Shown in pieces: positions 6,817 through 62,818 of a stretch of 64,000 nt of DNA. Within the stretch, counting starts at the first letter, position 1; each line of letters begins with the position of its first letter. The notes beneath the pieces were generated by a model that saw nothing but the letters and a program-made list of their open reading frames with translations, did no database searches and was not told the origin of the DNA. The position numbers and the translations under genes are program-made. The stretch lies in IMG/VR virus record IMGVR_UViG_3300042922_000643, positions 186,001 through 250,000 of that record; one strand, written 5' to 3'.

Positions 6817-8820
6817 ATGAAAAATGTTAACGTTACTGCTGCTAGTTTTGTCGTAGGTAAGAATGCGGATCTGACTGTACGTGTTGCTGAAATGGTAGAG
6901 GCAGGCGTGTTGACAGACAAAGCATTTGAAATGGCTGAGCTGGTAAAAGCAGGTATGTCTGTTGGGATCACTGTTCGTAATCCTCACAACAAGAAAGAGC
7001 ATATCGCTGAGGTCAACGAATTGGTTGGCATCCTGAATCGTATGGTTGCTGAAGATCTGGAAGTTGTTGTTGAAGAAGCTCCAAAACAAACTACAAAGAA
7101 AGAAGTGGTAGAAATGAAAACAGCTCCAATGACAAAAGAAGATATTAAGGCTCGCATCATTCACCTGGAAGGCGAAATTGTATTGGCTGAGAAACTGTTC
7201 ACAGATGGCAAACTGAAATTCGACAAAAAGACTGAACGCATCAACGCTGCGGATCGTGAGATTGATATTCTCAGACGCAAGCTGGCTGAACTGTCTGCCC
7301 CTACTGAAACAATGAGCGGTCACACTCGTACAGCAAGAGAACTGTGGGCAGACCGTCATGTCGATATCAGCGCAGGTAGTGCGACTGCTGCTCAGAACGA
7401 TCACAGTAAGGGTGCAAGAAACGCTGCATTCCGTGAAATCTCGGATCGTATTGAATATGCAAAGAATGACTATATGGCATCCCTGAAGTCCAATGATGTT
7501 GTTGTGTATGACATCGTCTACAAACAGGGTGACTATGATCGTATTGGTAACATCGTATTCCGTGTTCCTGCTGGTATGATGGAAATCAGCAAATGGACAG
7601 GTGAAAAGTATGAATGGGTATCCATGGACGATCATGACTATGATGGTACACTGCCTACTAGACGTCGTCTGATGGCTGGTTCTGGCTTCATCCGTTTGGC
7701 TATCAAGATGGATGCCAACAAAATGCCATATATCTCTTGGCCGAAGTCCAAAGGTAAAAATGAAGGTCAGTACTATGAAGTATTCAAGACAGCTGATGCT
7801 CGCTTTGACTTCTTGACTTCCGATAACAACCTGAATCTGAAAGCAGCTCTGGAAACTTTCTTGCTCACCTTCTGGGGTAAGCTAATGACTGCCAACGTTC
7901 GTAATCGTTCAGCTTTCAATGCAAGCTGCAACAATTGCAGATTCAAGACTGACCTGCCAATCTATGATGGTGTGGATGAAGAGTATGAGCACAAAGCAAA
8001 TGCTATCGACACTTCTGAGCTGGGTCAATATGGTTCCCGTATGCCACAGCTGATCTGCACCGTGCATAGCCAACTGATGGACCGTGATCTGATTGAAGAA
8101 GTGAATGAATCGGAAGCTGTGCAAGGTAAACAGTATTTCGATGAAGAAGGTAATGTTCGCTTTGCGGGTCCGAATCATGTTGTGGTTGGTGGTAAGCCTG
8201 TTGCTCTGTATAATCTGCGGAGTCAGGCTACTGTAGACACTTGCGCTGGATGCCCGTTCTACTCCAAGAACGAACGCAAACCAGACAAACGTTATGACAA
8301 GGAAGTTGAAGAAGCAGTATTCGAATACACCAAGGCTGGTGGCAAGATCGTTCGTAAAGAAGAAGATGGCCGCCTGGATCTGAAAGCTATGGGCATCTAT
8401 GTGAGCAAATACTGGACAGATCGTGCAAATGCAAACGCTCAGCCTGTATTCACGAAGACTATCGAGCATGGTAATACAAAGTGGACTCTGGGCTTCCCTG
8501 GTGAATTCGAGAACCCACAAGACTTCATGGTTATGGGTATCGGCGGTATTCGTATCTATGGTTCCCCTGATGTACTGCGTGTTGCGAAATGGGACTTCGT
8601 TCCACAAGTCGAAGCATTCCGTGCAGAAGAAGCCTCGGTTCTTAAGCTGGTTGATATCATTCACCAGACTGCAAATCAGATCACTCGTATTGATCAGGCC
8701 ACCCTGGATAACGTCATTAAGATGATCCAGACTACACCTAAGCCAGTGAAGGAACCATTGGTGACTCGTTACAACCGTGCGATCAAACGTTTGGCTGATA
8801 CGATCCGCGAAAATCAATAA
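6817..8820 (+). CDS. large hypothetical protein; possible SpoVG-like nucleic-acid-binding domain plus Cys-rich (CxxC) region
   Basis: AAGGAG RBS before ATG 6817; PYISWPKSKG..GQYYEVFK resembles the SpoVG FVAMPSK..G.Y.D motif; CNNC and CAGC motifs. Confidence 0.7.
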   Translation: MKNVNVTAASFVVGKNADLTVRVAEMVEAGVLTDKAFEMAELVKAGMSVGITVRNPHNKKEHIAEVNELVGILNRMVAEDLEVVVEEAPKQTTKKEVVEMKTAPMTKEDIKARIIHLEGEIVLAEKLFTDGKLKFDKKTERINAADREIDILRRKLAELSAPTETMSGHTRTARELWADRHVDISAGSATAAQNDHSKGARNAAFREISDRIEYAKNDYMASLKSNDVVVYDIVYKQGDYDRIGNIVFRVPAGMMEISKWTGEKYEWVSMDDHDYDGTLPTRRRLMAGSGFIRLAIKMDANKMPYISWPKSKGKNEGQYYEVFKTADARFDFLTSDNNLNLKAALETFLLTFWGKLMTANVRNRSAFNASCNNCRFKTDLPIYDGVDEEYEHKANAIDTSELGQYGSRMPQLICTVHSQLMDRDLIEEVNESEAVQGKQYFDEEGNVRFAGPNHVVVGGKPVALYNLRSQATVDTCAGCPFYSKNERKPDKRYDKEVEEAVFEYTKAGGKIVRKEEDGRLDLKAMGIYVSKYWTDRANANAQPVFTKTIEHGNTKWTLGFPGEFENPQDFMVMGIGGIRIYGSPDVLRVAKWDFVPQVEAFRAEEASVLKLVDIIHQTANQITRIDQATLDNVIKMIQTTPKPVKEPLVTRYNRAIKRLADTIRENQ

Positions 8821-49835: not shown

Positions 49836-50798
49836 ATGGATTTTGAATTGAAAAATAACTTCGTATTGGATGTAAAAGCAAATGAACCAAAACATTTTGT
49901 ACTGATCGGTTGCGGCGGTAATGGCGCATATTTCATTCGGGACTTCATTCGTCAAGTTGCTATTCAAAACATGCAAATGTCTATGTCTTTGGATAAACGT
50001 TCGCACTGCGTTACTGTTATCGATGCCGACGAAGTTGAAGACAAGAATTTGACTCGTCAAAACTTCGTACAGAAGGACGTCGGATCTAATAAATCACAGA
50101 TTCTTGCAAATCGTTACGGTTCAGCTTTCGGCGTACCGATTCGGTATGTGCCCGAATATATTCAGAACGAAGAGCATCTTTTGTCTATCATTCAGGGACA
50201 ACCAGGAACGCCTGTCATCCTCGGAGCTGTCGATAACAATAAGACCCGTAAGATCATCTATGATACCTATAAGAAGCTCAGCGGAGCCTTCTGGATCGAT
50301 GCTGGTAACGAGCAATATGCAGGCCAGGTTGTTTGTGGGTATAACTACCCTAGCGCACCTGACACAAGCAAAGCTCGGGAACCTCATCAGTTCTATATGC
50401 CTTGTGCAATTGATATTTATCCTGAAATCGCTGAAGCAACAGATAAACTTCCTGGTGAATTGTCCTGCGCAGAACGTTCAGTATCTGCACCGCAGAACAT
50501 TTTCACAAATATCACAGCTGCAACAATCATGATGGGATTTGCGAATATCATTCTCACCGCATCGAATGTTGCTGAAGGCGAAGGACTTCGCTGTCATGCT
50601 GTAACTTTCAATACTCATAATACCATCGCTCAGACTACTCGATTGAATCATGAAGATTTATTAGCTGCACGCTATGTAGCTCCTCCTGTAGCTGAAGCAC
50701 CAGAAGCTCCAGTCCCTACACCAGCGGTGAAGAAACCTGCATCCAAGAAAAAGAAAGCTCCTGCATCCGCTGCTCCTGTTCCTGCACCAACAGCATAA
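49836..50798 (+). CDS. E1-like ThiF-family adenylyltransferase (PRTRC ThiF type)
   Basis: LIGCGGNG, IDADEVEDKNLTRQNF, KS..LA.RY, VDNNKTR, DAGNE, ELSCAE (candidate catalytic Cys). Confidence 0.9.
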   Translation: MDFELKNNFVLDVKANEPKHFVLIGCGGNGAYFIRDFIRQVAIQNMQMSMSLDKRSHCVTVIDADEVEDKNLTRQNFVQKDVGSNKSQILANRYGSAFGVPIRYVPEYIQNEEHLLSIIQGQPGTPVILGAVDNNKTRKIIYDTYKKLSGAFWIDAGNEQYAGQVVCGYNYPSAPDTSKAREPHQFYMPCAIDIYPEIAEATDKLPGELSCAERSVSAPQNIFTNITAATIMMGFANIILTASNVAEGEGLRCHAVTFNTHNTIAQTTRLNHEDLLAARYVAPPVAEAPEAPVPTPAVKKPASKKKKAPASAAPVPAPTA

Positions 50799-52886: not shown

Positions 52887-52915
52887 TTGCAACTGTATTG
52901 ACGTTATGGTACAAT
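52887..52915 (+). promoter_or_regulatory. sigmaA-type promoter
   Basis: TTGCAA, 17-nt spacer, extended -10 TG-N-TACAAT. Confidence 0.7.
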
Positions 52916-52966
52916 CATTTTTGTTGAGAAGTGATCGGGAAAATACATTAAAAAGGTGGAGATAAA

Positions 52967-53515
52967 ATGAACCCAGTTCGAGAAGAAAATAAGATTACAA
53001 TTGCTGAAACCGTTGCTGTAAAAACCTATATGACACGTCACCTCAGCGAGCTGCAATCGGAGCGTACTCGTGCTGCTACAGAGGAAGTCGATAAAGGCGC
53101 TACTGCTGAAATTCCAGCACGTAACGTTGATGTAATCACAGATGAAATCTGGGAAACGTTCAAAGATATTCGAACTATTGAAAATCTCCTTGAACAAGCC
53201 AACATTCAAAATTATGTTGAATGGGATGGGCAAAAGATCACTGTTAGCGAAGCAATCTCTTTCGCTAAACAAATTCGTAGCCAAATTGATACGCTGAAGA
53301 GTCTCGGCCAACGAAAGAAGATTGATAAGGTTCCAAATCGTCCATTTGGCACAACGGATTCGGTTCCCCAAATTCGTGTGGCTCTTTACGATCCTGATAA
53401 ATACCGTGAATATGCGGCAAAGCTGGAACGTCAAGTCAATGCTCTTTCTAGAGACATTGATCACTCGAATCACACGAATTATATCGTGTTTGACGCTTCA
53501 AAATATATCGGATAA
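52967..53515 (+). CDS. DIP1984-like helical protein
   Basis: ITIAE.V..K...SELQSE...AN.QNYVEWDGQKITVSEAI..A.Q.R...YDPDKYR..A.KLERQ...L...I...N pattern. Confidence 0.6.
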   Translation: MNPVREENKITIAETVAVKTYMTRHLSELQSERTRAATEEVDKGATAEIPARNVDVITDEIWETFKDIRTIENLLEQANIQNYVEWDGQKITVSEAISFAKQIRSQIDTLKSLGQRKKIDKVPNRPFGTTDSVPQIRVALYDPDKYREYAAKLERQVNALSRDIDHSNHTNYIVFDASKYIG

Positions 53516-53559
53516 TATGGAGGTAGACATAATCATCTTCCTCTTTTACGTAACCTGAG

Positions 53560-54370
53560 CTAGCACTTTGATGCTGCTCAGCTTGAAGGATATAACGTTT
53601 ATACAGTGTTTTCGCTATAGACCGTTGACGCCTTAGCTGCTGAGGTTATATGCGATGTACGGCACTCGAAGACCTTGCATCCTTCAAGCTGAGCGAAGAA
53701 GATTATACGACGTGCTGAAGAGTAGCCATATCCGACGCCTGAGCGAACAGGGGCTAGGCTTTGAAATCCCCTGACTCCTAAGACATTAGCGTCCGAATTC
53801 TTCTCCCCAGCTTGAAGAGTATAAGTGGTAGTAGGCCTGGAAGCAGCCATCTTAAGAGTGGGACAGCGGCTATAACTTGCTCCGTGACACTGGGCTAACT
53901 CGGGTAGCGGATAAAAGCATTTTATAGAGAGGAAATAAGGAGGCACCCCGTAACTGGTAAGGCCGACCTTTCCCTTTAGCGTAATAGCACACCATTTATA
54001 CTTTTCAAGCTGTTTGGGGAACAGCAATCGTCTATTTCCAGAAAATCAGCCTCTATCATGAGGGAGGAGAGAAATCTCCTCCACAGCTTGAAGCTCCCAA
54101 GTTAAATAAAATAGTCGTTCAAATCGACGGCGTGGGTTATCCTCGCCAGCCATTGGAGGCACTTGGGAGTTACAAGCTGTGGGAACACAGCAGCAGGAAG
54201 ATGTGAGCAACAGGGTTCTAGCCAGCTGACCTGGTTAGACGCGTATCGGCGGTGGTTATCCAGCGTGCGAGACACAACCAAACCAACTTGACATTGGTGT
54301 TACCTTAGGCAGGTACAAGAACCAACGTATAAGCGAATAACGGTTGACACCTTACGATAGTCACATCTAA
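53560..54370 (+). ncRNA. large multi-domain structured RNA with six alternately oriented CAGCTTGAAG repeats; contains cassettes F and D
   Basis: stems 53576-53591/53679-53694, 53808-53829/53991-54012, 54081-54102/54161-54182, 54199-54206/54361-54368; no credible ORF. Confidence 0.7.
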
Positions 54371-54494
54371 CATACTCCTTTGGATATTTCCTTTCGGAAA
54401 TTCGGAAAAGTCTCTGCTTCCTGCTTTATTTTAATATTCTCTAGGGGGACACATGGTGTGTCCTCTTTTCCATTTCTATAAGGCGGTGATATTT

Positions 54495-54890
54495 ATGAAT
54501 TACCTTGATCCACGAGAAGGAAAAGAAATCACAGGTAGTACGGGGGAAATCCGCGTCAGACTCGTTGGTGGATCATTTCATGAATCTGCCTTTGCTACTG
54601 TTAAAGAGGGGGACGAAGTTACCCTTCAAAAAGAACCCAAAAATAAATATGACAGATATGCTATTGTAGTGCTCTCTGAAAATAACCGTGTTTTGGGTTA
54701 TATTGCCAATAGAGTAGAAACTATTGGGAGAAACAAAGCAACAAATTCCGCAGCGGATGTATATAGACATATCAACGATAGAACATCAGCTATCATAATT
54801 GATAAGAGTCCAAGCTCTGCCGTACTTTTGATTAATGCTTCGAATGAAGTTTTTTTAAATAGATTAAAGGAGGAGAAGTTCGATGATTAA
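54495..54890 (+). CDS. HIRAN domain protein with C-terminal motif
   Basis: VKEGDEVTLQKEPKNKYDRYAIVVL....LGYI; ends ASNEVFLNRLKEEKFDD. Confidence 0.85.
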   Translation: MNYLDPREGKEITGSTGEIRVRLVGGSFHESAFATVKEGDEVTLQKEPKNKYDRYAIVVLSENNRVLGYIANRVETIGRNKATNSAADVYRHINDRTSAIIIDKSPSSAVLLINASNEVFLNRLKEEKFDD

Positions 54891-55472: not shown

Positions 55473-55610
55473 AGTAAAGTCACAATAGGATTTATACGCT
55501 TCGATATAGTCAAGACCCGTAGTCTATTACTGGGTTGAAGCCACGTAACCTTCCATCGGAAACGTGGCTGTCTATAAATCTGCCGAAGATCCTATTGTGA
55601 CTTTACTTTA
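55470..55610 (+). ncRNA. RNA cassette E
   Basis: perfect 22-bp stem 55470-55491/55589-55610 plus U-G; TATACG 55493-55498; CCGAA 55583-55587. Confidence 0.8.
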
Positions 55611-55629
55611 TAATAAGGTGGGAACATTT

Positions 55630-57789
55630 ATGAGAACGTTAGTCCTTACTCGTGGTATAATGGCTTCTTCAAAATCAACATGGATTGCTGAAAATGGTCT
55701 TGCACCTTTTACTTTATCTAGTGATAACTTGCGTCTACTCCATTCTGCTCCACAGCTTCAAGAAGATGGCAAGCAGGTAATAGCGGGATCGCAAGAAGGT
55801 AAGATCTGGAAACTTTTATTTGAAGTTTTGGAGCGACGTATGCAAAACGGCGATTTTACCGTCATTGATGCAACACATATTACTTCGAGTTCCATTTCTG
55901 AGTATCGTGAACTGGCTAATAAATATCGTTATCGCGTGTTTGTAGTGGATTTTACTAATGTTCCTTTGGAAATAGCTTTAGAGCGGAATAAAAATCGTGA
56001 AGAATATAAGTATGTTCCAGAACATAAGATTGAAATAGCTTATGCTAAGCTTTCAGAAAATCATGTGCCTTCTTATGCGAAAGTTATTAAACCAGAAGAA
56101 TTCTGGGATCATGTTTCATATACAAAAATTGATTACAGCTCTTATCGCAAAATTCATCATATCGGGGATGTTCATGGATGCTACAGTGCATTAATGACTT
56201 ACCTTTCAGGCGAAATGAAGGAAGACGAGTTGTATATTTTTGTTGGTGATTATCTAGACCGCGGCATTCAGAACCGCGAAGTTTTAGAATTCCTCATTCA
56301 GATTAAAGACCTTCCAAATGTTATTCTTCTTGAAGGTAATCATGAAACTCATCTTCGCAAATGGTCAATGGATGAAACCGTTAAAAGTTTAGCATTCAAC
56401 CACTATACCGAAAAAGAGATTCATGATGTTAATAAGTCCGCTGTTCGTGAACTGTGCAGAAAGTTCAGACAGGTTTGTTATTATGAATATTACGGCAAAA
56501 CAGTGCTCGTCACTCATGGAGGCTTATCCTGCATTCCAAACGAACTTGCTTTGATCTCGACTTCTCAATTTATTAAAGGAGTAGGAAATTATGAAGTTGA
56601 TATTGATGCTATTTTCTCGGCTTCTGAACAAGATGGAACGTACCAGGTCCATGGTCATCGCAACATCTTCAGACTGCCTATGCAAGCCGCTGAGCGTTCT
56701 TTTAACCTGGAGGGTAGAGTTGAATCAGGAGGAGACTTAAGGGCTCTTACACTAACTCCTGAGGGGTTTCAAGAGCATTGTATCCAGAATCATGTTTTTA
56801 CAACAGAACATTCTCCAATGCCTCCCGTTGTAGGTTCCAAAACAACTACAGACAATTTCATTGAATACCTTCAGTCACACAAAATGGTTAAAGAAACACA
56901 GATAACTGATCATATTTCATCTTTTAACTTTACACGTAAAGCATTCAATAATGGCGTTTGGGATACGCTTAACATCAAGGCTCGCGGCCTTTTTGTGAAT
57001 AAGCATACTCGAAAGATCGTTAGCCGATCTTATGATAAGTTTTTTAATATTGACGAAGTTCCAGCTACAAAGATGGGAACATTAGCCAATACCCTGGAAT
57101 TTCCTGTGATTTTGTCAGAAAAACCGAATGGATACCTAGGTATTATCGGGTATGATGAGGAGACAGATGAACTGATCTACTCTTCCAAGTCTGAAACTCG
57201 TGGTACTTATGCGGTATCATTCAGAAAACTTTTCGAAGAAAAAGTTCCTGTTGAAATACGTGCTTGGCTTAAAGGATATCTTTACGGAAATGACGTGTCG
57301 ATAACTTTTGAGGTTATTCTTCCACAAGAAGATCCACACATCATAGAATATAAAGAGAATACTTTGATCTTACTCGATATTATCCAGCGAAATGTTCAGT
57401 TCCAAAAGAGATCTTATTCCGAGGTTGTTGAGCTCGCAATGAATCTTCTTCTTCCATATCGTAAAATCAAATATGTCTTCCATAACTGGTTAAGTTTCTA
57501 TCACTGGTATCAAAACGCATCTCAAGATTATTCTGTTAAAGAAGAAGGGTATGTCCTTGAAGATAATTCAGGTTTTATGACAAAGATAAAATTACCGTAC
57601 TATCTTTTCTGGAAGCAAATGCGTACAGCAAAATTCCAGGTGAAGATGGAGGGCTATATGCTTCCTCAGTGGTTGCCGCCAATTCCTGACGATCTTAAAA
57701 ATTTCGTTGGGTGGGCTAAACAGCAAGATCAGGAGTATTTGAAACGCGTGGATGTTATCCAGTTGCGTACAGATTACGAGGGCTCTTAA
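55630..57789 (+). CDS. polynucleotide 5'-kinase / metallophosphoesterase / RNA ligase fusion (Pnkp-like RNA repair enzyme)
   Basis: P-loop-like RGIMASSKST and DATH; phosphoesterase GDVHG, GDYLDRG, GNHE, THGG, HGH; ligase KARGLF, EKPNG, EEGYV, KIK; start taken at ATG 55630. Confidence 0.88.
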   Translation: MRTLVLTRGIMASSKSTWIAENGLAPFTLSSDNLRLLHSAPQLQEDGKQVIAGSQEGKIWKLLFEVLERRMQNGDFTVIDATHITSSSISEYRELANKYRYRVFVVDFTNVPLEIALERNKNREEYKYVPEHKIEIAYAKLSENHVPSYAKVIKPEEFWDHVSYTKIDYSSYRKIHHIGDVHGCYSALMTYLSGEMKEDELYIFVGDYLDRGIQNREVLEFLIQIKDLPNVILLEGNHETHLRKWSMDETVKSLAFNHYTEKEIHDVNKSAVRELCRKFRQVCYYEYYGKTVLVTHGGLSCIPNELALISTSQFIKGVGNYEVDIDAIFSASEQDGTYQVHGHRNIFRLPMQAAERSFNLEGRVESGGDLRALTLTPEGFQEHCIQNHVFTTEHSPMPPVVGSKTTTDNFIEYLQSHKMVKETQITDHISSFNFTRKAFNNGVWDTLNIKARGLFVNKHTRKIVSRSYDKFFNIDEVPATKMGTLANTLEFPVILSEKPNGYLGIIGYDEETDELIYSSKSETRGTYAVSFRKLFEEKVPVEIRAWLKGYLYGNDVSITFEVILPQEDPHIIEYKENTLILLDIIQRNVQFQKRSYSEVVELAMNLLLPYRKIKYVFHNWLSFYHWYQNASQDYSVKEEGYVLEDNSGFMTKIKLPYYLFWKQMRTAKFQVKMEGYMLPQWLPPIPDDLKNFVGWAKQQDQEYLKRVDVIQLRTDYEGS

Positions 57790-58721: not shown

Positions 58722-58795
58722 ACAAGATTAACTCAGTTGGTAGAGTAGCCGCCATTATTGGAGGTCAGTCGCAGGTTCAAGTCCTGCATCTTGAA
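58722..58795 (+). ncRNA. tRNA-like RNA without a canonical anticodon loop
   Basis: D-arm ACTC-AGTTGGTA-GAGT; T-arm GCAGG-TTCAAGT-CCTGC; 6-bp acceptor; anticodon arm closes on a 4-nt TTAT loop; no CCA. Confidence 0.7.
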
Positions 58796-58817: not shown

Positions 58818-58896
58818 TTCCGCAGGTATAGCTCAGAGGTAGAGCGGGGCCAGGTTGCTGGTCATGTCGCGGGTTCGATCCCCGTTATCCGTGGAA
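58818..58896 (+). ncRNA. tRNA-like RNA, apparently tRNA-Asn-derived, without a canonical anticodon loop
   Basis: D-arm GCTC-AGAGGTA-GAGC; T-arm GCGGG-TTCGATC-CCCGT; arm GGCCAG-GTTG-CTGGTC; extended ~11-bp acceptor; no CCA. Confidence 0.7.
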
Positions 58897-62348: not shown

Positions 62349-62818
62349 TAATAGATGAACGGAAGTGTTCATGAGCGCCCTTGGCGAGCAATCGCCATTG
62401 AATAACTAGGTGAATTTAGGGGAGTCCTGGAGCAACAGTCGTGAGACAGATGTATGGTGACCCTAAGCGAAGTTTTGTGTAGATGGTGGCGGAATAGGTA
62501 GACGATAGGTCGGCTTAGTAGGTTTGGGTTGTGGTTCGAATCCACGATGCGCAATACGCGTAGACGCCGTGACGGTAAAAACCTGGCTATGTGAGGTGCA
62601 AATCCTCACCCACTATACAAAAAACGTTCAACGACTATTCTTGAAATGGCCATGAGAATTGGCAACAGAAGTAGGGCCTATGCTTATAAAGATAGGCGGG
62701 TGAGAGTCCCTTAATCCGAAGCGCCTAGCATCCTCAGAACTTTGGGGATGGTGATATAGTCTACTCCCTCTCTGCTCGACAGAGAATTCAAAATATGGGG
62801 AAACCCAGGGTGAGATGG
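62349..62818 (+). ncRNA. group I self-splicing intron (IA-like core, no endonuclease ORF)
   Basis: removal restores GYAFNKSHSVAY; exon ends in U, intron ends in G; P7 strands GACTA 62633-62637 and TAGTC 62757-62761 within TCAACGACTA and GATATAGTC. Confidence 0.9.

What the first reader, a model, noticed from the sequence alone, without database searches (positions are those of the whole stretch)
52887..54370. sigmaA promoter, DIP1984-like gene and a ~900-nt RNA built on six alternately oriented CAGCTTGAAG repeats
Seen: repeats R1+ 53579, R2- 53682, R3+ 53808, R4- 54003, R5+ 54084 and R6- 54170. The 1-2, 3-4 and 5-6 pairings extend to 16, 22 and 22 bp, with G-U as nearly the only imperfections; 2-3 and 4-5 form an alternative register. 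A fourth domain is closed by 54199-54206/54361-54368. A strong promoter drives the upstream helical protein, which I recognise as DIP1984-like (function unknown). Inference: a protein-plus-large-RNA unit in which the repeated dsRNA core is a binding or cleavage site, within an RNA-repair neighbourhood.
Basis: partly seen in the sequence, partly recalled or inferred. Interest (0 to 1): 0.8.

Follow-up and report, generated by a model that had tools for sequence, protein, structure and literature searches.

The report
Modular phage RNA with ribosome mimic
Right after a small helical protein gene of unknown function, this jumbo phage encodes a roughly 950-base folded RNA whose core is shared with Bacillus-group bacteria and phages and is missing from RNA catalogues, and one of its three added hairpin cassettes copies the ribosome's L11-binding site.

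Summary
The repeats and the three long pairings are real, and they are far more than chance. It is the conserved core (about 190-250 nt) of an RNA family that directly follows DIP1984/DUF6847-like genes in about 20 lineages: Paenibacillus, Bacillus and Thermoactinomycetaceae chromosomes, Agatevirus phages and jumbo phages. The core has strong covariation: 18 of 24 pairs show compensatory changes, and 91% of cells are paired against 43-51% in controls. A covariance model built from it recovers relatives that were not used to build it. No Rfam 15 family matches, and I found no paper describing it.

The core carries an array of U-N-A-C motifs with conserved 7-7-9-7 spacing. The repeated helix reads CUUNAAG on both strands and occurs once in the bacterial versions. 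This phage has three copies, each closing an inserted cassette. Cassette 2 copies 23S rRNA helices 42-44, the L11/GTPase-associated centre, with G at position 1067 and an extra arm. The same mimic stands alone inside tRNA gene clusters of more than 10 other large phages.

Transcription, processing and protein binding were not shown. The protein family is acidic, so direct RNA binding is uncertain. My best reading is a co-transcribed protein-plus-RNA module that acts on the translation apparatus.

The parts
52887..52915 (+). Sigma-A-type promoter-like site: -35 TTGCAA, 17-nt spacer, extended -10 TGgTACAAT
   Evidence: 9 of 12 matches with TG; sequence read. Consensus match only; such sites are not enriched over shuffles.
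52967..53515 (+). 182-aa DIP1984/DUF6847-like helical protein, function unknown, acidic
   Evidence: NCBIfam DIP1984_fam scores 16.2 bits (cut-off 70). 71 of 83 relatives match it and 61 of 83 match PF20935. The family profile hits PDB 3kdq at E = 1.6e-11. The AF2 model has pLDDT 96 and its only fold match is 3kdq, TM 0.68/0.80. PHROG 25222, E = 6e-21. pI 5.7.
53516..54442 (+). Whole non-coding structured RNA region between the stop codon and the terminator (about 930 nt)
   Evidence: No ORF in it matches a protein family. GC is raised. Fold z = -5.4. No Rfam match.
53575..53695 (+). Cassette 1, closed by helix I (53575-53598/53672-53695). No relative found for its interior.
53808..54012 (+). 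Cassette 2, closed by helix II (53808-53829/53991-54012): a 23S rRNA H42-H44 (L11/GTPase-associated centre) mimic with an inserted arm of about 125 nt
   Evidence: Helix II has 3 compensatory changes against L019 (sequences, read by eye). rRNA matches are.
53826..53857 (+). H43-like hairpin plus junction strand, equivalent to E. coli 23S 1055-1088; G at the position of A1067
   Evidence: printed alignment with E. coli and P. megaterium 23S.
53975..53992 (+). H44-like hairpin (loop GUAAUA kept), equivalent to E. coli 23S 1090-1104
   Evidence: A co-linear second match was reached by 0 of 3000 shuffles.
54080..54183 (+). Cassette 3, closed by helix III (54080-54102/54161-54183)
   Evidence: The equivalent 22-bp helix in L002 keeps pairing through many two-sided changes (sequence, read by eye).
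54176..54191 (+). Hairpin GCUGUG-GGAA-CACAGC (GNRA loop). It overlaps the 3' arm of helix III, so the two exclude each other.
   Evidence: It covaries: GCUGGU-GCAA-ACCAGC in Agatevirus and GCUGA...UCAGC in L002.
54186..54432 (+). Conserved family core. P1 is 54192-54200/54417-54425. P2 is 54202-54207/54412-54416, with two one-base bulges.
   Evidence: Model R1 scores 109.6 bits, E = 1e-24; it is the only hit in 64 kb and there is none on the - strand. Covariation.
54217..54239 (+). Hairpin A of the core (9 bp, 5-nt loop)
   Evidence: All 8 modelled pairs show two-sided changes across 15 sequences.
54323..54375 (+). Array of U-N-A-C motifs (UAAC, UGAC, UUAC, UCAC, UAAC) spaced 7-7-9-7
   Evidence: T, A and C of each repeat are invariant or nearly so in A7/A8. 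The same spacing is seen in P. lautus L031 (sequence, counted by eye).
54443..54477 (+). Intrinsic terminator-like hairpin (11 pairs) plus T run
   Evidence: An equivalent terminator follows the core in L002.

Best explanation
This is a two-part module: a DIP1984/DUF6847-like protein gene and, co-transcribed as its 3' extension, a structured RNA of a family not yet catalogued.

Shown:
- The RNA core is conserved.
- The core covaries.
- The core sits directly after the gene in bacteria and phages.

Inferred:
1. Transcription starts at the promoter-like site at 52887, runs through the ORF and the RNA, and stops at 54443-54477.
2. The long helices that read CUUNAAG on both strands are two-fold symmetric duplexes recognised by a dimeric double-strand RNA factor. 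RNase III is the most economical candidate and the co-encoded protein the alternative. Cutting there would separate the mRNA from the RNA and would release or delimit the cassettes.
3. The mature core presents its heptad-spaced U-N-A-C array as a platform for several copies of a partner.
4. In this phage, three copies of the signature helix carry inserted cassettes. Cassette 2 folds like the L11-binding GTPase-associated centre of 23S rRNA and captures free uL11 or another ligand of that site.

The net effect would be an RNA or RNP that titrates or re-routes components of the host translation apparatus during infection.
For: Co-occurrence:
- A non-coding gap of 360-1070 nt follows the gene in L002, L013, L014, L016, L019-L022, L024, L027-L031, L033, L035 and the Agatevirus phages.
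- Model R1 hits 21 of the loci, always on the + strand and right after the gene. These include the Agatevirus loci, L023 and L033, which were not in the seed. It gives no hit in rRNA operons.

Structure:
- 90.8% of cells are paired against 43-51% when partners are slid.
- 18 of 24 pairs have two-sided changes.
- 0 of 500 shuffles reach the observed covariation score.

Strand:
- G-U pairs in all three long helices.
- The + strand folds better.
- + strand terminators.

Signature helix: CTTNAAG occurs 11 times in the pre-core regions against 0.8 expected; the highest of 500 shuffles is 5.

Array: T-N-A-C columns are invariant or nearly so.

rRNA mimic:
- The H43 match has p of about 0.02 for the window and was reached by 0 of 300 shuffles for L019.
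- The co-linear H44 match was reached by 0 of 3000 shuffles.
- The only Rfam hits to this cassette are LSU rRNA, at H43 (window; L019 also into H44).
- The same signature lies in 14 further loci from viral contigs (11 distinct sequences), inside tRNA clusters. The closing stems differ between contigs but stay complementary, as read by eye.

Weak sign of expression: soil metatranscriptome runs hold 11-46% of the 31-mers of the P. lautus copy.
Against: - There is no RNA evidence for this locus. Only three soil DNA runs hold it.
- The protein family is acidic (median pI 5.5, net charge -3), which is unusual for a direct RNA binder.
- More distant homologues lack the core (L034, L037, L038), so the link holds for a subfamily only.
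- No processing enzyme or partner was identified.
- The mimic has G at the position of A1067 and an extra arm, so L11 binding is unproven.
- Cassettes 1 and 3 have no relatives and no assigned role.
- Predicted pairing probability of the array is intermediate (0.52), so it is not clearly single-stranded.
Confidence: 0.5

Rival explanations
1. The RNA works on its own, as ROOL, GOLLD or raiA may do. It sits behind the DIP1984-like gene only because it borrows that gene's promoter, and the protein is not a partner.
For: - The protein is acidic.
- The GAC-mimic module occurs in other phages with no DIP1984-like gene within about 5 kb.
- Distant homologues of the protein lack the RNA.
Against: - Gene and RNA stay adjacent in the same order and orientation across bacterial chromosomes with unrelated neighbours and across several phage groups.
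- No copy of the core was found away from such a gene in about 320 kb of fetched loci.
Confidence: 0.2
2. It is a cis-acting 3' untranslated element that stabilises or autoregulates the DIP1984-like mRNA, for example as a 3' exonuclease block or a protein feedback site.
For: - The first long hairpin begins within 0-60 nt of the stop codon in all members.
- No terminator separates the ORF from the RNA.
Against: - A core of 190-250 nt with invariant single-stranded motifs, and cassettes of up to 900 nt including an rRNA mimic, is far more than a stabiliser needs.
- The shared RNA blocks are about 90% identical between the window and L019, while the two proteins are only 41% identical.
Confidence: 0.15
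3. It is a toxin-antitoxin-like or decoy pair. In this reading the U-N-A-C array is a pseudo-substrate that soaks up a sequence-specific endoribonuclease, and the protein is the other half of the pair.
For: - Repeated short motifs.
- Chromosomal stand-alone two-gene modules with variable neighbours.
- Presence in phages next to RNA-repair genes.
Against: - No tandem direct repeats like ToxI. The ToxI model scores 19 bits against a threshold of 50.
- The protein has no nuclease fold; only 3kdq matches.
- The PADLOC library was not searched.
Confidence: 0.08
4. The inverted repeats act at the DNA level, as inversion or recombination sites or as terminal repeats of small inserted mobile elements. 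In this reading the region is not a functional RNA.
For: - Three pairs of 22-23-nt inverted repeats share a 10-mer.
- The cassettes look like insertions relative to the bacterial versions.
Against: - The helices keep pairing through two-sided changes in L019 and L002, and they contain G-U pairs that would be A-C mismatches on the other strand.
- No target-site duplications flank them.
- Three metagenome assemblies give one arrangement with no joints. Contigs can hide rare variants.
Confidence: 0.04

Closest known systems
ROOL and GOLLD large ornate RNAs of phages and Bacillota
   Same: They are several hundred nucleotides long and highly structured. They are encoded by phages or prophages, often beside tRNA genes, and their function is unknown.
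   Different: Neither covariance model matches here, although the same kind of search finds a true ROOL in locus L045. This RNA is tied to a specific upstream protein gene, has a different core, and is built from cassettes closed by one repeated helix.
OLE RNA with its Oap protein partners in Bacillota
   Same: A large structured RNA of Bacillota, encoded next to the genes of proteins it works with.
   Different: No sequence or structure match. The partner here is a soluble acidic helical protein, not a membrane protein. The RNA lies 3' of the gene.
L11-binding GTPase-associated centre of 23S rRNA (helices 42-44), and ribosomal-protein mRNA sites that mimic rRNA
   Same: Cassette 2 keeps the closing stem, the H43 hairpin with the GAAGCAGCC loop, the junction strand and the H44 loop GUAAUA, all in the same order.
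   Different: It has G where rRNA has A1067 and A where rRNA has U1061. An extra arm of 50-270 nt is inserted before H44. It lies in a phage non-coding RNA rather than in rRNA or a ribosomal-protein leader. Binding of L11 was not tested.
Protein-titrating RNAs with spaced short motifs (CsrB/RsmZ with GGA; TRAP- and HutP-binding arrays)
   Same: Five to seven copies of a 3-4-nt motif at a fixed period; HutP sites also have a period of 7 (from my own knowledge).
   Different: The motif is U-N-A-C. The partner is unknown. The array is enclosed in a larger conserved fold.
ToxI-type RNA antitoxins and phage pseudo-ToxI decoys
   Same: A protein gene paired with a repetitive RNA, also found in phages.
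   Different: There are no tandem 34-36-nt repeats. The RNA lies downstream, not upstream. The protein is not a Kid/MazF-like nuclease.

Membership tests
ROOL RNA (Rfam RF03087) | Covariance-model score at or above the gathering score (99.1 bits) | tested here: not met
   No hit at gathering score or at E up to 10. Positive control: L045 scores 307.6 bits.
GOLLD, OLE, raiA, HEARO and all other Rfam 15 families | Covariance-model score at or above the family's gathering score | tested here: not met
   Only chance-level hits in the region: MIR396 at 21.9 bits against 80, and ToxI at 19.2 against 50.
DIP1984 family / DUF6847 (protein) | NCBIfam NF038048 score of at least 70 bits, or Pfam PF20935 above its gathering score | tested here: not met
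   16.2 bits, E = 0.0088; no Pfam hit for this protein.
DIP1984 family / DUF6847 (protein) | Profile-level homology and the same fold as the solved member 3kdq | tested here: met
   - Family profile against 3kdq: E = 1.6e-11 over the full length.
- 71 of 83 relatives match NF038048.
- Foldseek: E = 3e-5, TM 0.68/0.80, and no other fold match.
23S rRNA GTPase-associated centre (H42-H44) | H43 and H44 hairpins with their loop sequences, in order, closed by a stem | tested here: met
   The closing stems differ between 12 phage lineages but stay complementary (read by eye).
23S rRNA GTPase-associated centre (H42-H44) | A at position 1067 and a compact three-way junction | tested here: not met
   G replaces A1067 in the window and L019; in the contigs it was fixed by the search pattern. 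An arm of 51-269 nt is inserted before H44.
23S rRNA GTPase-associated centre (H42-H44) | Binds ribosomal protein uL11 | not testable with these tools
   Needs a binding assay.
Type III toxin-antitoxin RNA (ToxI-like) | Tandem direct repeats of about 34-36 nt upstream of an endoribonuclease gene | tested here: not met
   No tandem family among the direct repeats. ToxI model scores 19.2 bits against 50. The protein fold is helical.
DIP1984-gene 3' RNA (family defined here, model R1) | P1/P2 closing helix with two bulges, hairpin A and the U-N-A-C array, directly 3' of a DIP1984-like gene | tested here: met
   109.6 bits, E = 1e-24, at 54186-54432 on the + strand. The window was one of the 15 seed sequences, so its own score is by construction. 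The non-seed hits L009-L012, L023 and L033 validate the model.

The most novel reading that the evidence does not exclude
Bacillales and their phages carry an undescribed RNP system: a DIP1984-like protein plus a scaffold RNA with a heptad U-N-A-C array. Large phages have turned it into a modular decoy by plugging ribosome-mimic cassettes into copies of one symmetric helix. The GAC mimic, which many large phages also encode alone inside tRNA clusters, sequesters uL11 or a GAC-binding factor such as RelA or a translational GTPase, in order to blunt the stringent response or a ribosome-directed defence.
Probability: 0.2. Interest if true: 0.92.

Novelty: categorically new. Interest (0 to 1): 0.8.

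Why it matters
If this holds, there are three consequences.
- It gives a first functional handle on a widespread protein family of unknown function (DIP1984/DUF6847, with a solved structure, 3kdq): a dedicated RNA partner or co-product.
- It adds a new conserved structured RNA family to Bacillota and their phages. Covariation already supports it, and there are cultivable hosts to test it in: Paenibacillus lautus NBRC 15380, and B. pumilus with phiAGATE or Bobb.
- It reveals that large phages encode stand-alone copies of the ribosome's L11/GTPase-associated centre. That would be a new kind of molecular mimicry aimed at the translation machinery or the stringent response.

As a concept, protein-linked structured RNAs and rRNA mimicry have precedents. 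As a sequence and structure family, this matches nothing catalogued.

Tried and rejected
Known RNA families. Rfam at gathering and E-value thresholds, run on the window, the region and 24 related loci, found nothing relevant.

Close relatives by DNA. Nucleotide BLAST of the region against INPHARED phages gave only a 57-nt chance hit.

Retrieving loci:
- A word-indexed protein search found only 2 proteins; the exhaustive HMMER search was needed.

The idea that the whole RNA is made of rRNA pieces:
- Matches to the L1 stalk, H89, H45 and others looked attractive against E. coli 23S.
- They are no better than shuffles or minus-strand hits, and they do not reproduce against P. megaterium rRNA.
- Only the H43/H44 mimic survived.
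- The conserved block GGCACCCCGUAACUGGUAAGGC inside the mimic's arm (window, L019, L042) resembles a 23S hairpin only weakly (p = 0.065).

Other ideas rejected or left open:
- That the U-N-A-C motifs (NAC codons) pair with anticodons of Tyr/His/Asn/Asp tRNAs. Individual RNAs do not carry all four variants, and nothing tests the idea, so I keep it only as a thought.
- That AAACGGA pairs with UCCGUUU. This conflicts with the covarying P1.
- ORFs inside the gap. None matches a protein family.
- DNA inversion. No joints in three assemblies.

No help from:
- Fold searches and the Atlas, which gave no functional annotation beyond automatic names such as 'septicolysin' and 'Gp157'.
- Literature searches, which found nothing on DIP1984/DUF6847 function or on phage GAC mimics.
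Full report
**What is there**

The window is part of a phage contig of about 250 kb from soil (IMG/VR UViG 3300042922_000643). Three soil metagenome assemblies hold the region unchanged.

Between the stop codon of a 182-aa ORF (52967-53515) and a terminator-like hairpin (54443-54467 plus a T run) lie about 930 nt.
- No ORF in this stretch matches any protein family.
- GC is 47-50% against 33-42% in the flanks.
- The + strand folds much better than its shuffles (z = -5.4), and better than the - strand does (z = -3.8).

**The observation**

- Four copies are exact, R4 has one mismatch, and R6 is degenerate at 8 of 10.
- The enrichment is significant: 13 matches at up to one mismatch against 4.6 expected, reached by 0 of 100 shuffles.
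- Pairs 1-2, 3-4 and 5-6 extend to 16 contiguous pairs, 22 pairs and 22-23 pairs. G-U pairs are the main imperfections.
- G-U pairs would be A-C mismatches on the other strand, so the + strand is the RNA strand.

**The protein**

It scores below the curated thresholds of NCBIfam DIP1984_fam (16 bits against 70) and has no Pfam hit. An exhaustive HMMER search nevertheless finds 117 cluster representatives.
- 71 of 83 aligned relatives match DIP1984_fam, and 61 of 83 match DUF6847.
- The family profile hits PDB 3kdq at E = 1.6e-11.
- The AlphaFold model (pLDDT 96) matches only 3kdq.

So 'DIP1984-like' is right at the level of a distant subfamily. Nothing is known about the function. The family is acidic, with a median pI of 5.5.

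**The key result: a conserved RNA follows this gene**

I fetched the genomic surroundings of diverse homologues.
- Jumbo-phage-like contigs with the same synteny: L002, L024.
- Other phage contigs: L013, L014, L016, L019, L021.
- The cultured Agatevirus phages phiAGATE, Bobb, SDFMU_Pbc and Bp8p-C: L009-L012.
- Bacterial chromosomes: L020, L022, five Paenibacillus loci L027-L031, a Bacillus MAG L033 and a Thermoactinomycetaceae MAG L032.
- Two metagenome contigs: L035, L036.

In almost all of them a non-coding stretch of 360-1070 nt begins at the stop codon. In most, a terminator-like hairpin with a T run follows on the + strand (scanned; read by eye). In the bacteria the neighbouring genes are unrelated from genome to genome. 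The unit is therefore the gene plus the RNA.

**The core**

A 15-sequence alignment (A7) gives three elements.
- A closing helix, P1/P2: 16 pairs with two conserved one-base bulges. In the window it is 54192-54200/54417-54425 plus 54202-54207/54412-54416.
- Hairpin A, at 54217-54239.
- An array of U-N-A-C motifs.

The two helices covary strongly.
- 90.8% of cells are paired, against 43-51% when the partners are slid by 1-3 columns.
- 18 of 24 pairs have two-sided changes.
- 0 of 500 shuffles reach the observed covariation score.
- A clear example is GAGC/GCUC changing to GGGC/GCCC in several Paenibacillus and related loci.

A covariance model built from this alignment (R1) behaves as a real family model should.
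- It recovers loci that were not in the seed: Agatevirus at 29-35 bits (E from 1e-5 to 1e-7), L023 and L033.
- It hits the window once, at 54186-54432 on the + strand.
- It hits nothing on minus strands and nothing in two rRNA operons.

Homologues at or below about 32% identity (L034, L037, L038) and L013 (45%) lack the core. L036 and L037, where the gene follows a B3_4-domain gene, have a smaller version: a closing helix around an xNAC array.

It competes with P1/P2, however, and it is not the pairing that covaries.

**The array**

In the window the array spans 54323-54375 and reads UAAC, UGAC, UUAC, UCAC, UAAC with spacing 7-7-9-7. P. lautus has the same spacing with different middle bases. 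The U, A and C columns are invariant or nearly so, while N varies. This looks like a platform for several copies of one ligand. Nothing identifies that ligand.

**The repeated helix is a family signature**

Bacterial members, L013 and L002 begin with one long hairpin whose stem reads CUUCAAG on one strand and (C/U)UUGAAG on the other.
- Variants keep the pairing (for example CUCCAAG/UUUGGAG) or place a G-G mismatch at the centre.
- The exact heptamer CTTNAAG occurs 11 times in the pre-core regions against 0.8 expected; the highest of 500 shuffles is 5.
- Both strands read the same 5' to 3', so the duplex has two-fold symmetry and looks the same in either orientation. That explains why the window's copies are 'inverted' relative to the bacterial ones. 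It also suggests a dimeric double-strand RNA factor.
- The window has three copies, each closing a cassette.
- Helix II keeps pairing against L019 through three two-sided changes, and helix III against L002 through many (sequences, read by eye). This argues for selection at the RNA level and against terminal repeats of inserted DNA elements.
- The 3' arm of helix III overlaps a covarying GNRA hairpin (54176-54191), so the two structures exclude each other.

**Cassette 2 is a mimic of the ribosome's GTPase-associated centre**

- Positions 53826-53857 match E. coli 23S 1055-1088 (H43 and the junction strand).
- Positions 53975-53992 match 23S 1090-1104 (H44, with its GUAAUA loop).
- The two matches are in the same order, and the continuation of helix II closes them as H42 does.
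- The first match alone has p of about 0.02 for the window and was reached by 0 of 300 shuffles for L019. The co-linear second match was reached by 0 of 3000 shuffles.
- The only Rfam hits to this cassette are LSU rRNA at exactly this element.
- Differences from rRNA: G at position 1067, A at position 1061, and an arm of about 125 nt inserted before H44.

A pattern scan for the mimic's H43 signature found 14 further loci from viral contigs of 8-435 kb (11 distinct sequences).
- The element stands alone there, 130-350 nt long, inside dense tRNA gene clusters. In L040 it fills the space between two tRNAs exactly.
- No DIP1984-like gene lies nearby.
- Nine of the eleven distinct contig sequences, as well as the window and L019, have the H44-like 3' part. 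Their closing stems differ but stay complementary, as read by eye: for example AAAUACUUGG/CCAAGUAUUU against AAAUAGUUGG/CCAACUAUUU.
- No Rfam family covers them, and I found no paper on them.

Other apparent rRNA resemblances (L1 stalk, H89) did not survive controls. Cassettes 1 and 3 have no relatives among the loci fetched.

**How it most likely works**

Shown:
- The RNA family exists.
- It is structured.
- It is on the + strand.
- It is tied to the gene.
- One cassette mimics 23S helices 42-44.

Inferred:
- It is co-transcribed from the promoter-like site at 52887.
- A dimeric factor recognises or cleaves the symmetric helices. RNase III is the simplest candidate.
- The array serves as a multivalent platform.
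- The mimic captures uL11 or another ligand of that site.

There is some context for a translation theme.
- The window has an RNA-repair fusion enzyme and tRNAs downstream.
- L019 has PTH2 and an HD_4 domain gene beside the unit.
- Bacterial copies often sit near translation genes.

That context is suggestive only. The acidic protein is the main reason for caution about a direct RNP.

**Expression**

No RNA run holds the window's sequence. Four soil metatranscriptome runs hold 11-46% of the sampled words of the P. lautus copy. That is a weak sign of transcription, and I could not follow it up.

**Verdict**

The thing itself is an uncatalogued RNA family with a lineage-specific modular expansion, and that expansion includes a ribosomal RNA mimic that turns out to be widespread in large phages.

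Noticed in passing
L039-L052 (for example L040:1196-1382, L042:4235-4365, L045:7850-8010): A stand-alone mimic of 23S H42-H44 lies inside tRNA gene clusters in 14 loci from viral contigs of 8-435 kb (11 distinct sequences). It has G at position 1067 and a variable extra arm of 51-269 nt. No Rfam family covers it and no DIP1984-like gene is nearby. It looks like an undescribed phage RNA family in its own right.
   Followed up: partly
L036:2295-2480 and L037:2517-2670: In a more distant branch, the DIP1984-like gene directly follows a B3_4 (tRNA-synthetase-type) domain gene. It is followed by a smaller RNA: a closing helix around an xNAC(C)-rich array. In L037 the neighbours are QueG, a SpoU methylase and ProRS.
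   Followed up: partly
window 54128-54142 and 54247-54261: A direct repeat, CGGCG(T/G)(G/T)GGTTATCC, places two similar hairpins with a GGUUAUCC loop, one in cassette 3 and one in the variable part of the core. Its meaning is unknown.
   Followed up: no
window 53936-53965; L019:1776-1804; L042:4303-4337: A nearly identical block, GGCACCCCGUAACUGGUAAGGC, sits inside the extra arm of the GAC mimic in three otherwise diverged lineages. It resembles a 23S domain IV hairpin only weakly (p = 0.065).
   Followed up: partly
window 53490-53518: A second promoter-like site (TTGACG-17-TAATAT) lies at the very end of the ORF and could drive the RNA on its own. It is not conserved in L002.
   Followed up: no
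window 55564-57789: A 741-aa fusion of polynucleotide kinase (AAA_33), metallophosphatase and T4 Rnl1-type RNA ligase. Its best phage relatives are SPbeta-like Bacillus phages at about 47% identity.
   Followed up: partly
window 58722-58795, 58822-58893 and 62357-62786: Two tRNA genes, the first called by ARAGORN with an undetermined anticodon (reported as 'ta'), and a group I intron (Rfam 50.1 bits, just at the threshold).
   Followed up: no
window 49836-50798 and 54453-54890; L002, L004, L024: Conserved synteny around the unit in jumbo-phage relatives: a ThiF-like E1 (with Prok-E2_D in L004), an NT5C nucleotidase, NADAR, then the DIP1984-like gene plus RNA, then a HIRAN-domain protein.
   Followed up: no
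L019:2397-4114: Just downstream of the unit, this phage contig encodes a PTH2 peptidyl-tRNA hydrolase and an HD_4 (RelA/SpoT-type hydrolase) domain protein. An RNase H-like RVT_3 protein lies upstream.
   Followed up: no
L045:2696-3274: A bona fide ROOL RNA (307.6 bits) lies in the same tRNA-rich region as a stand-alone GAC mimic (at 7873).
   Followed up: no
L002:6995-7011: The long variable part of the L002 RNA contains a tRNA T-arm-like hairpin, GAGGUUCAAAUCCUC. No full tRNA is called there.
   Followed up: no
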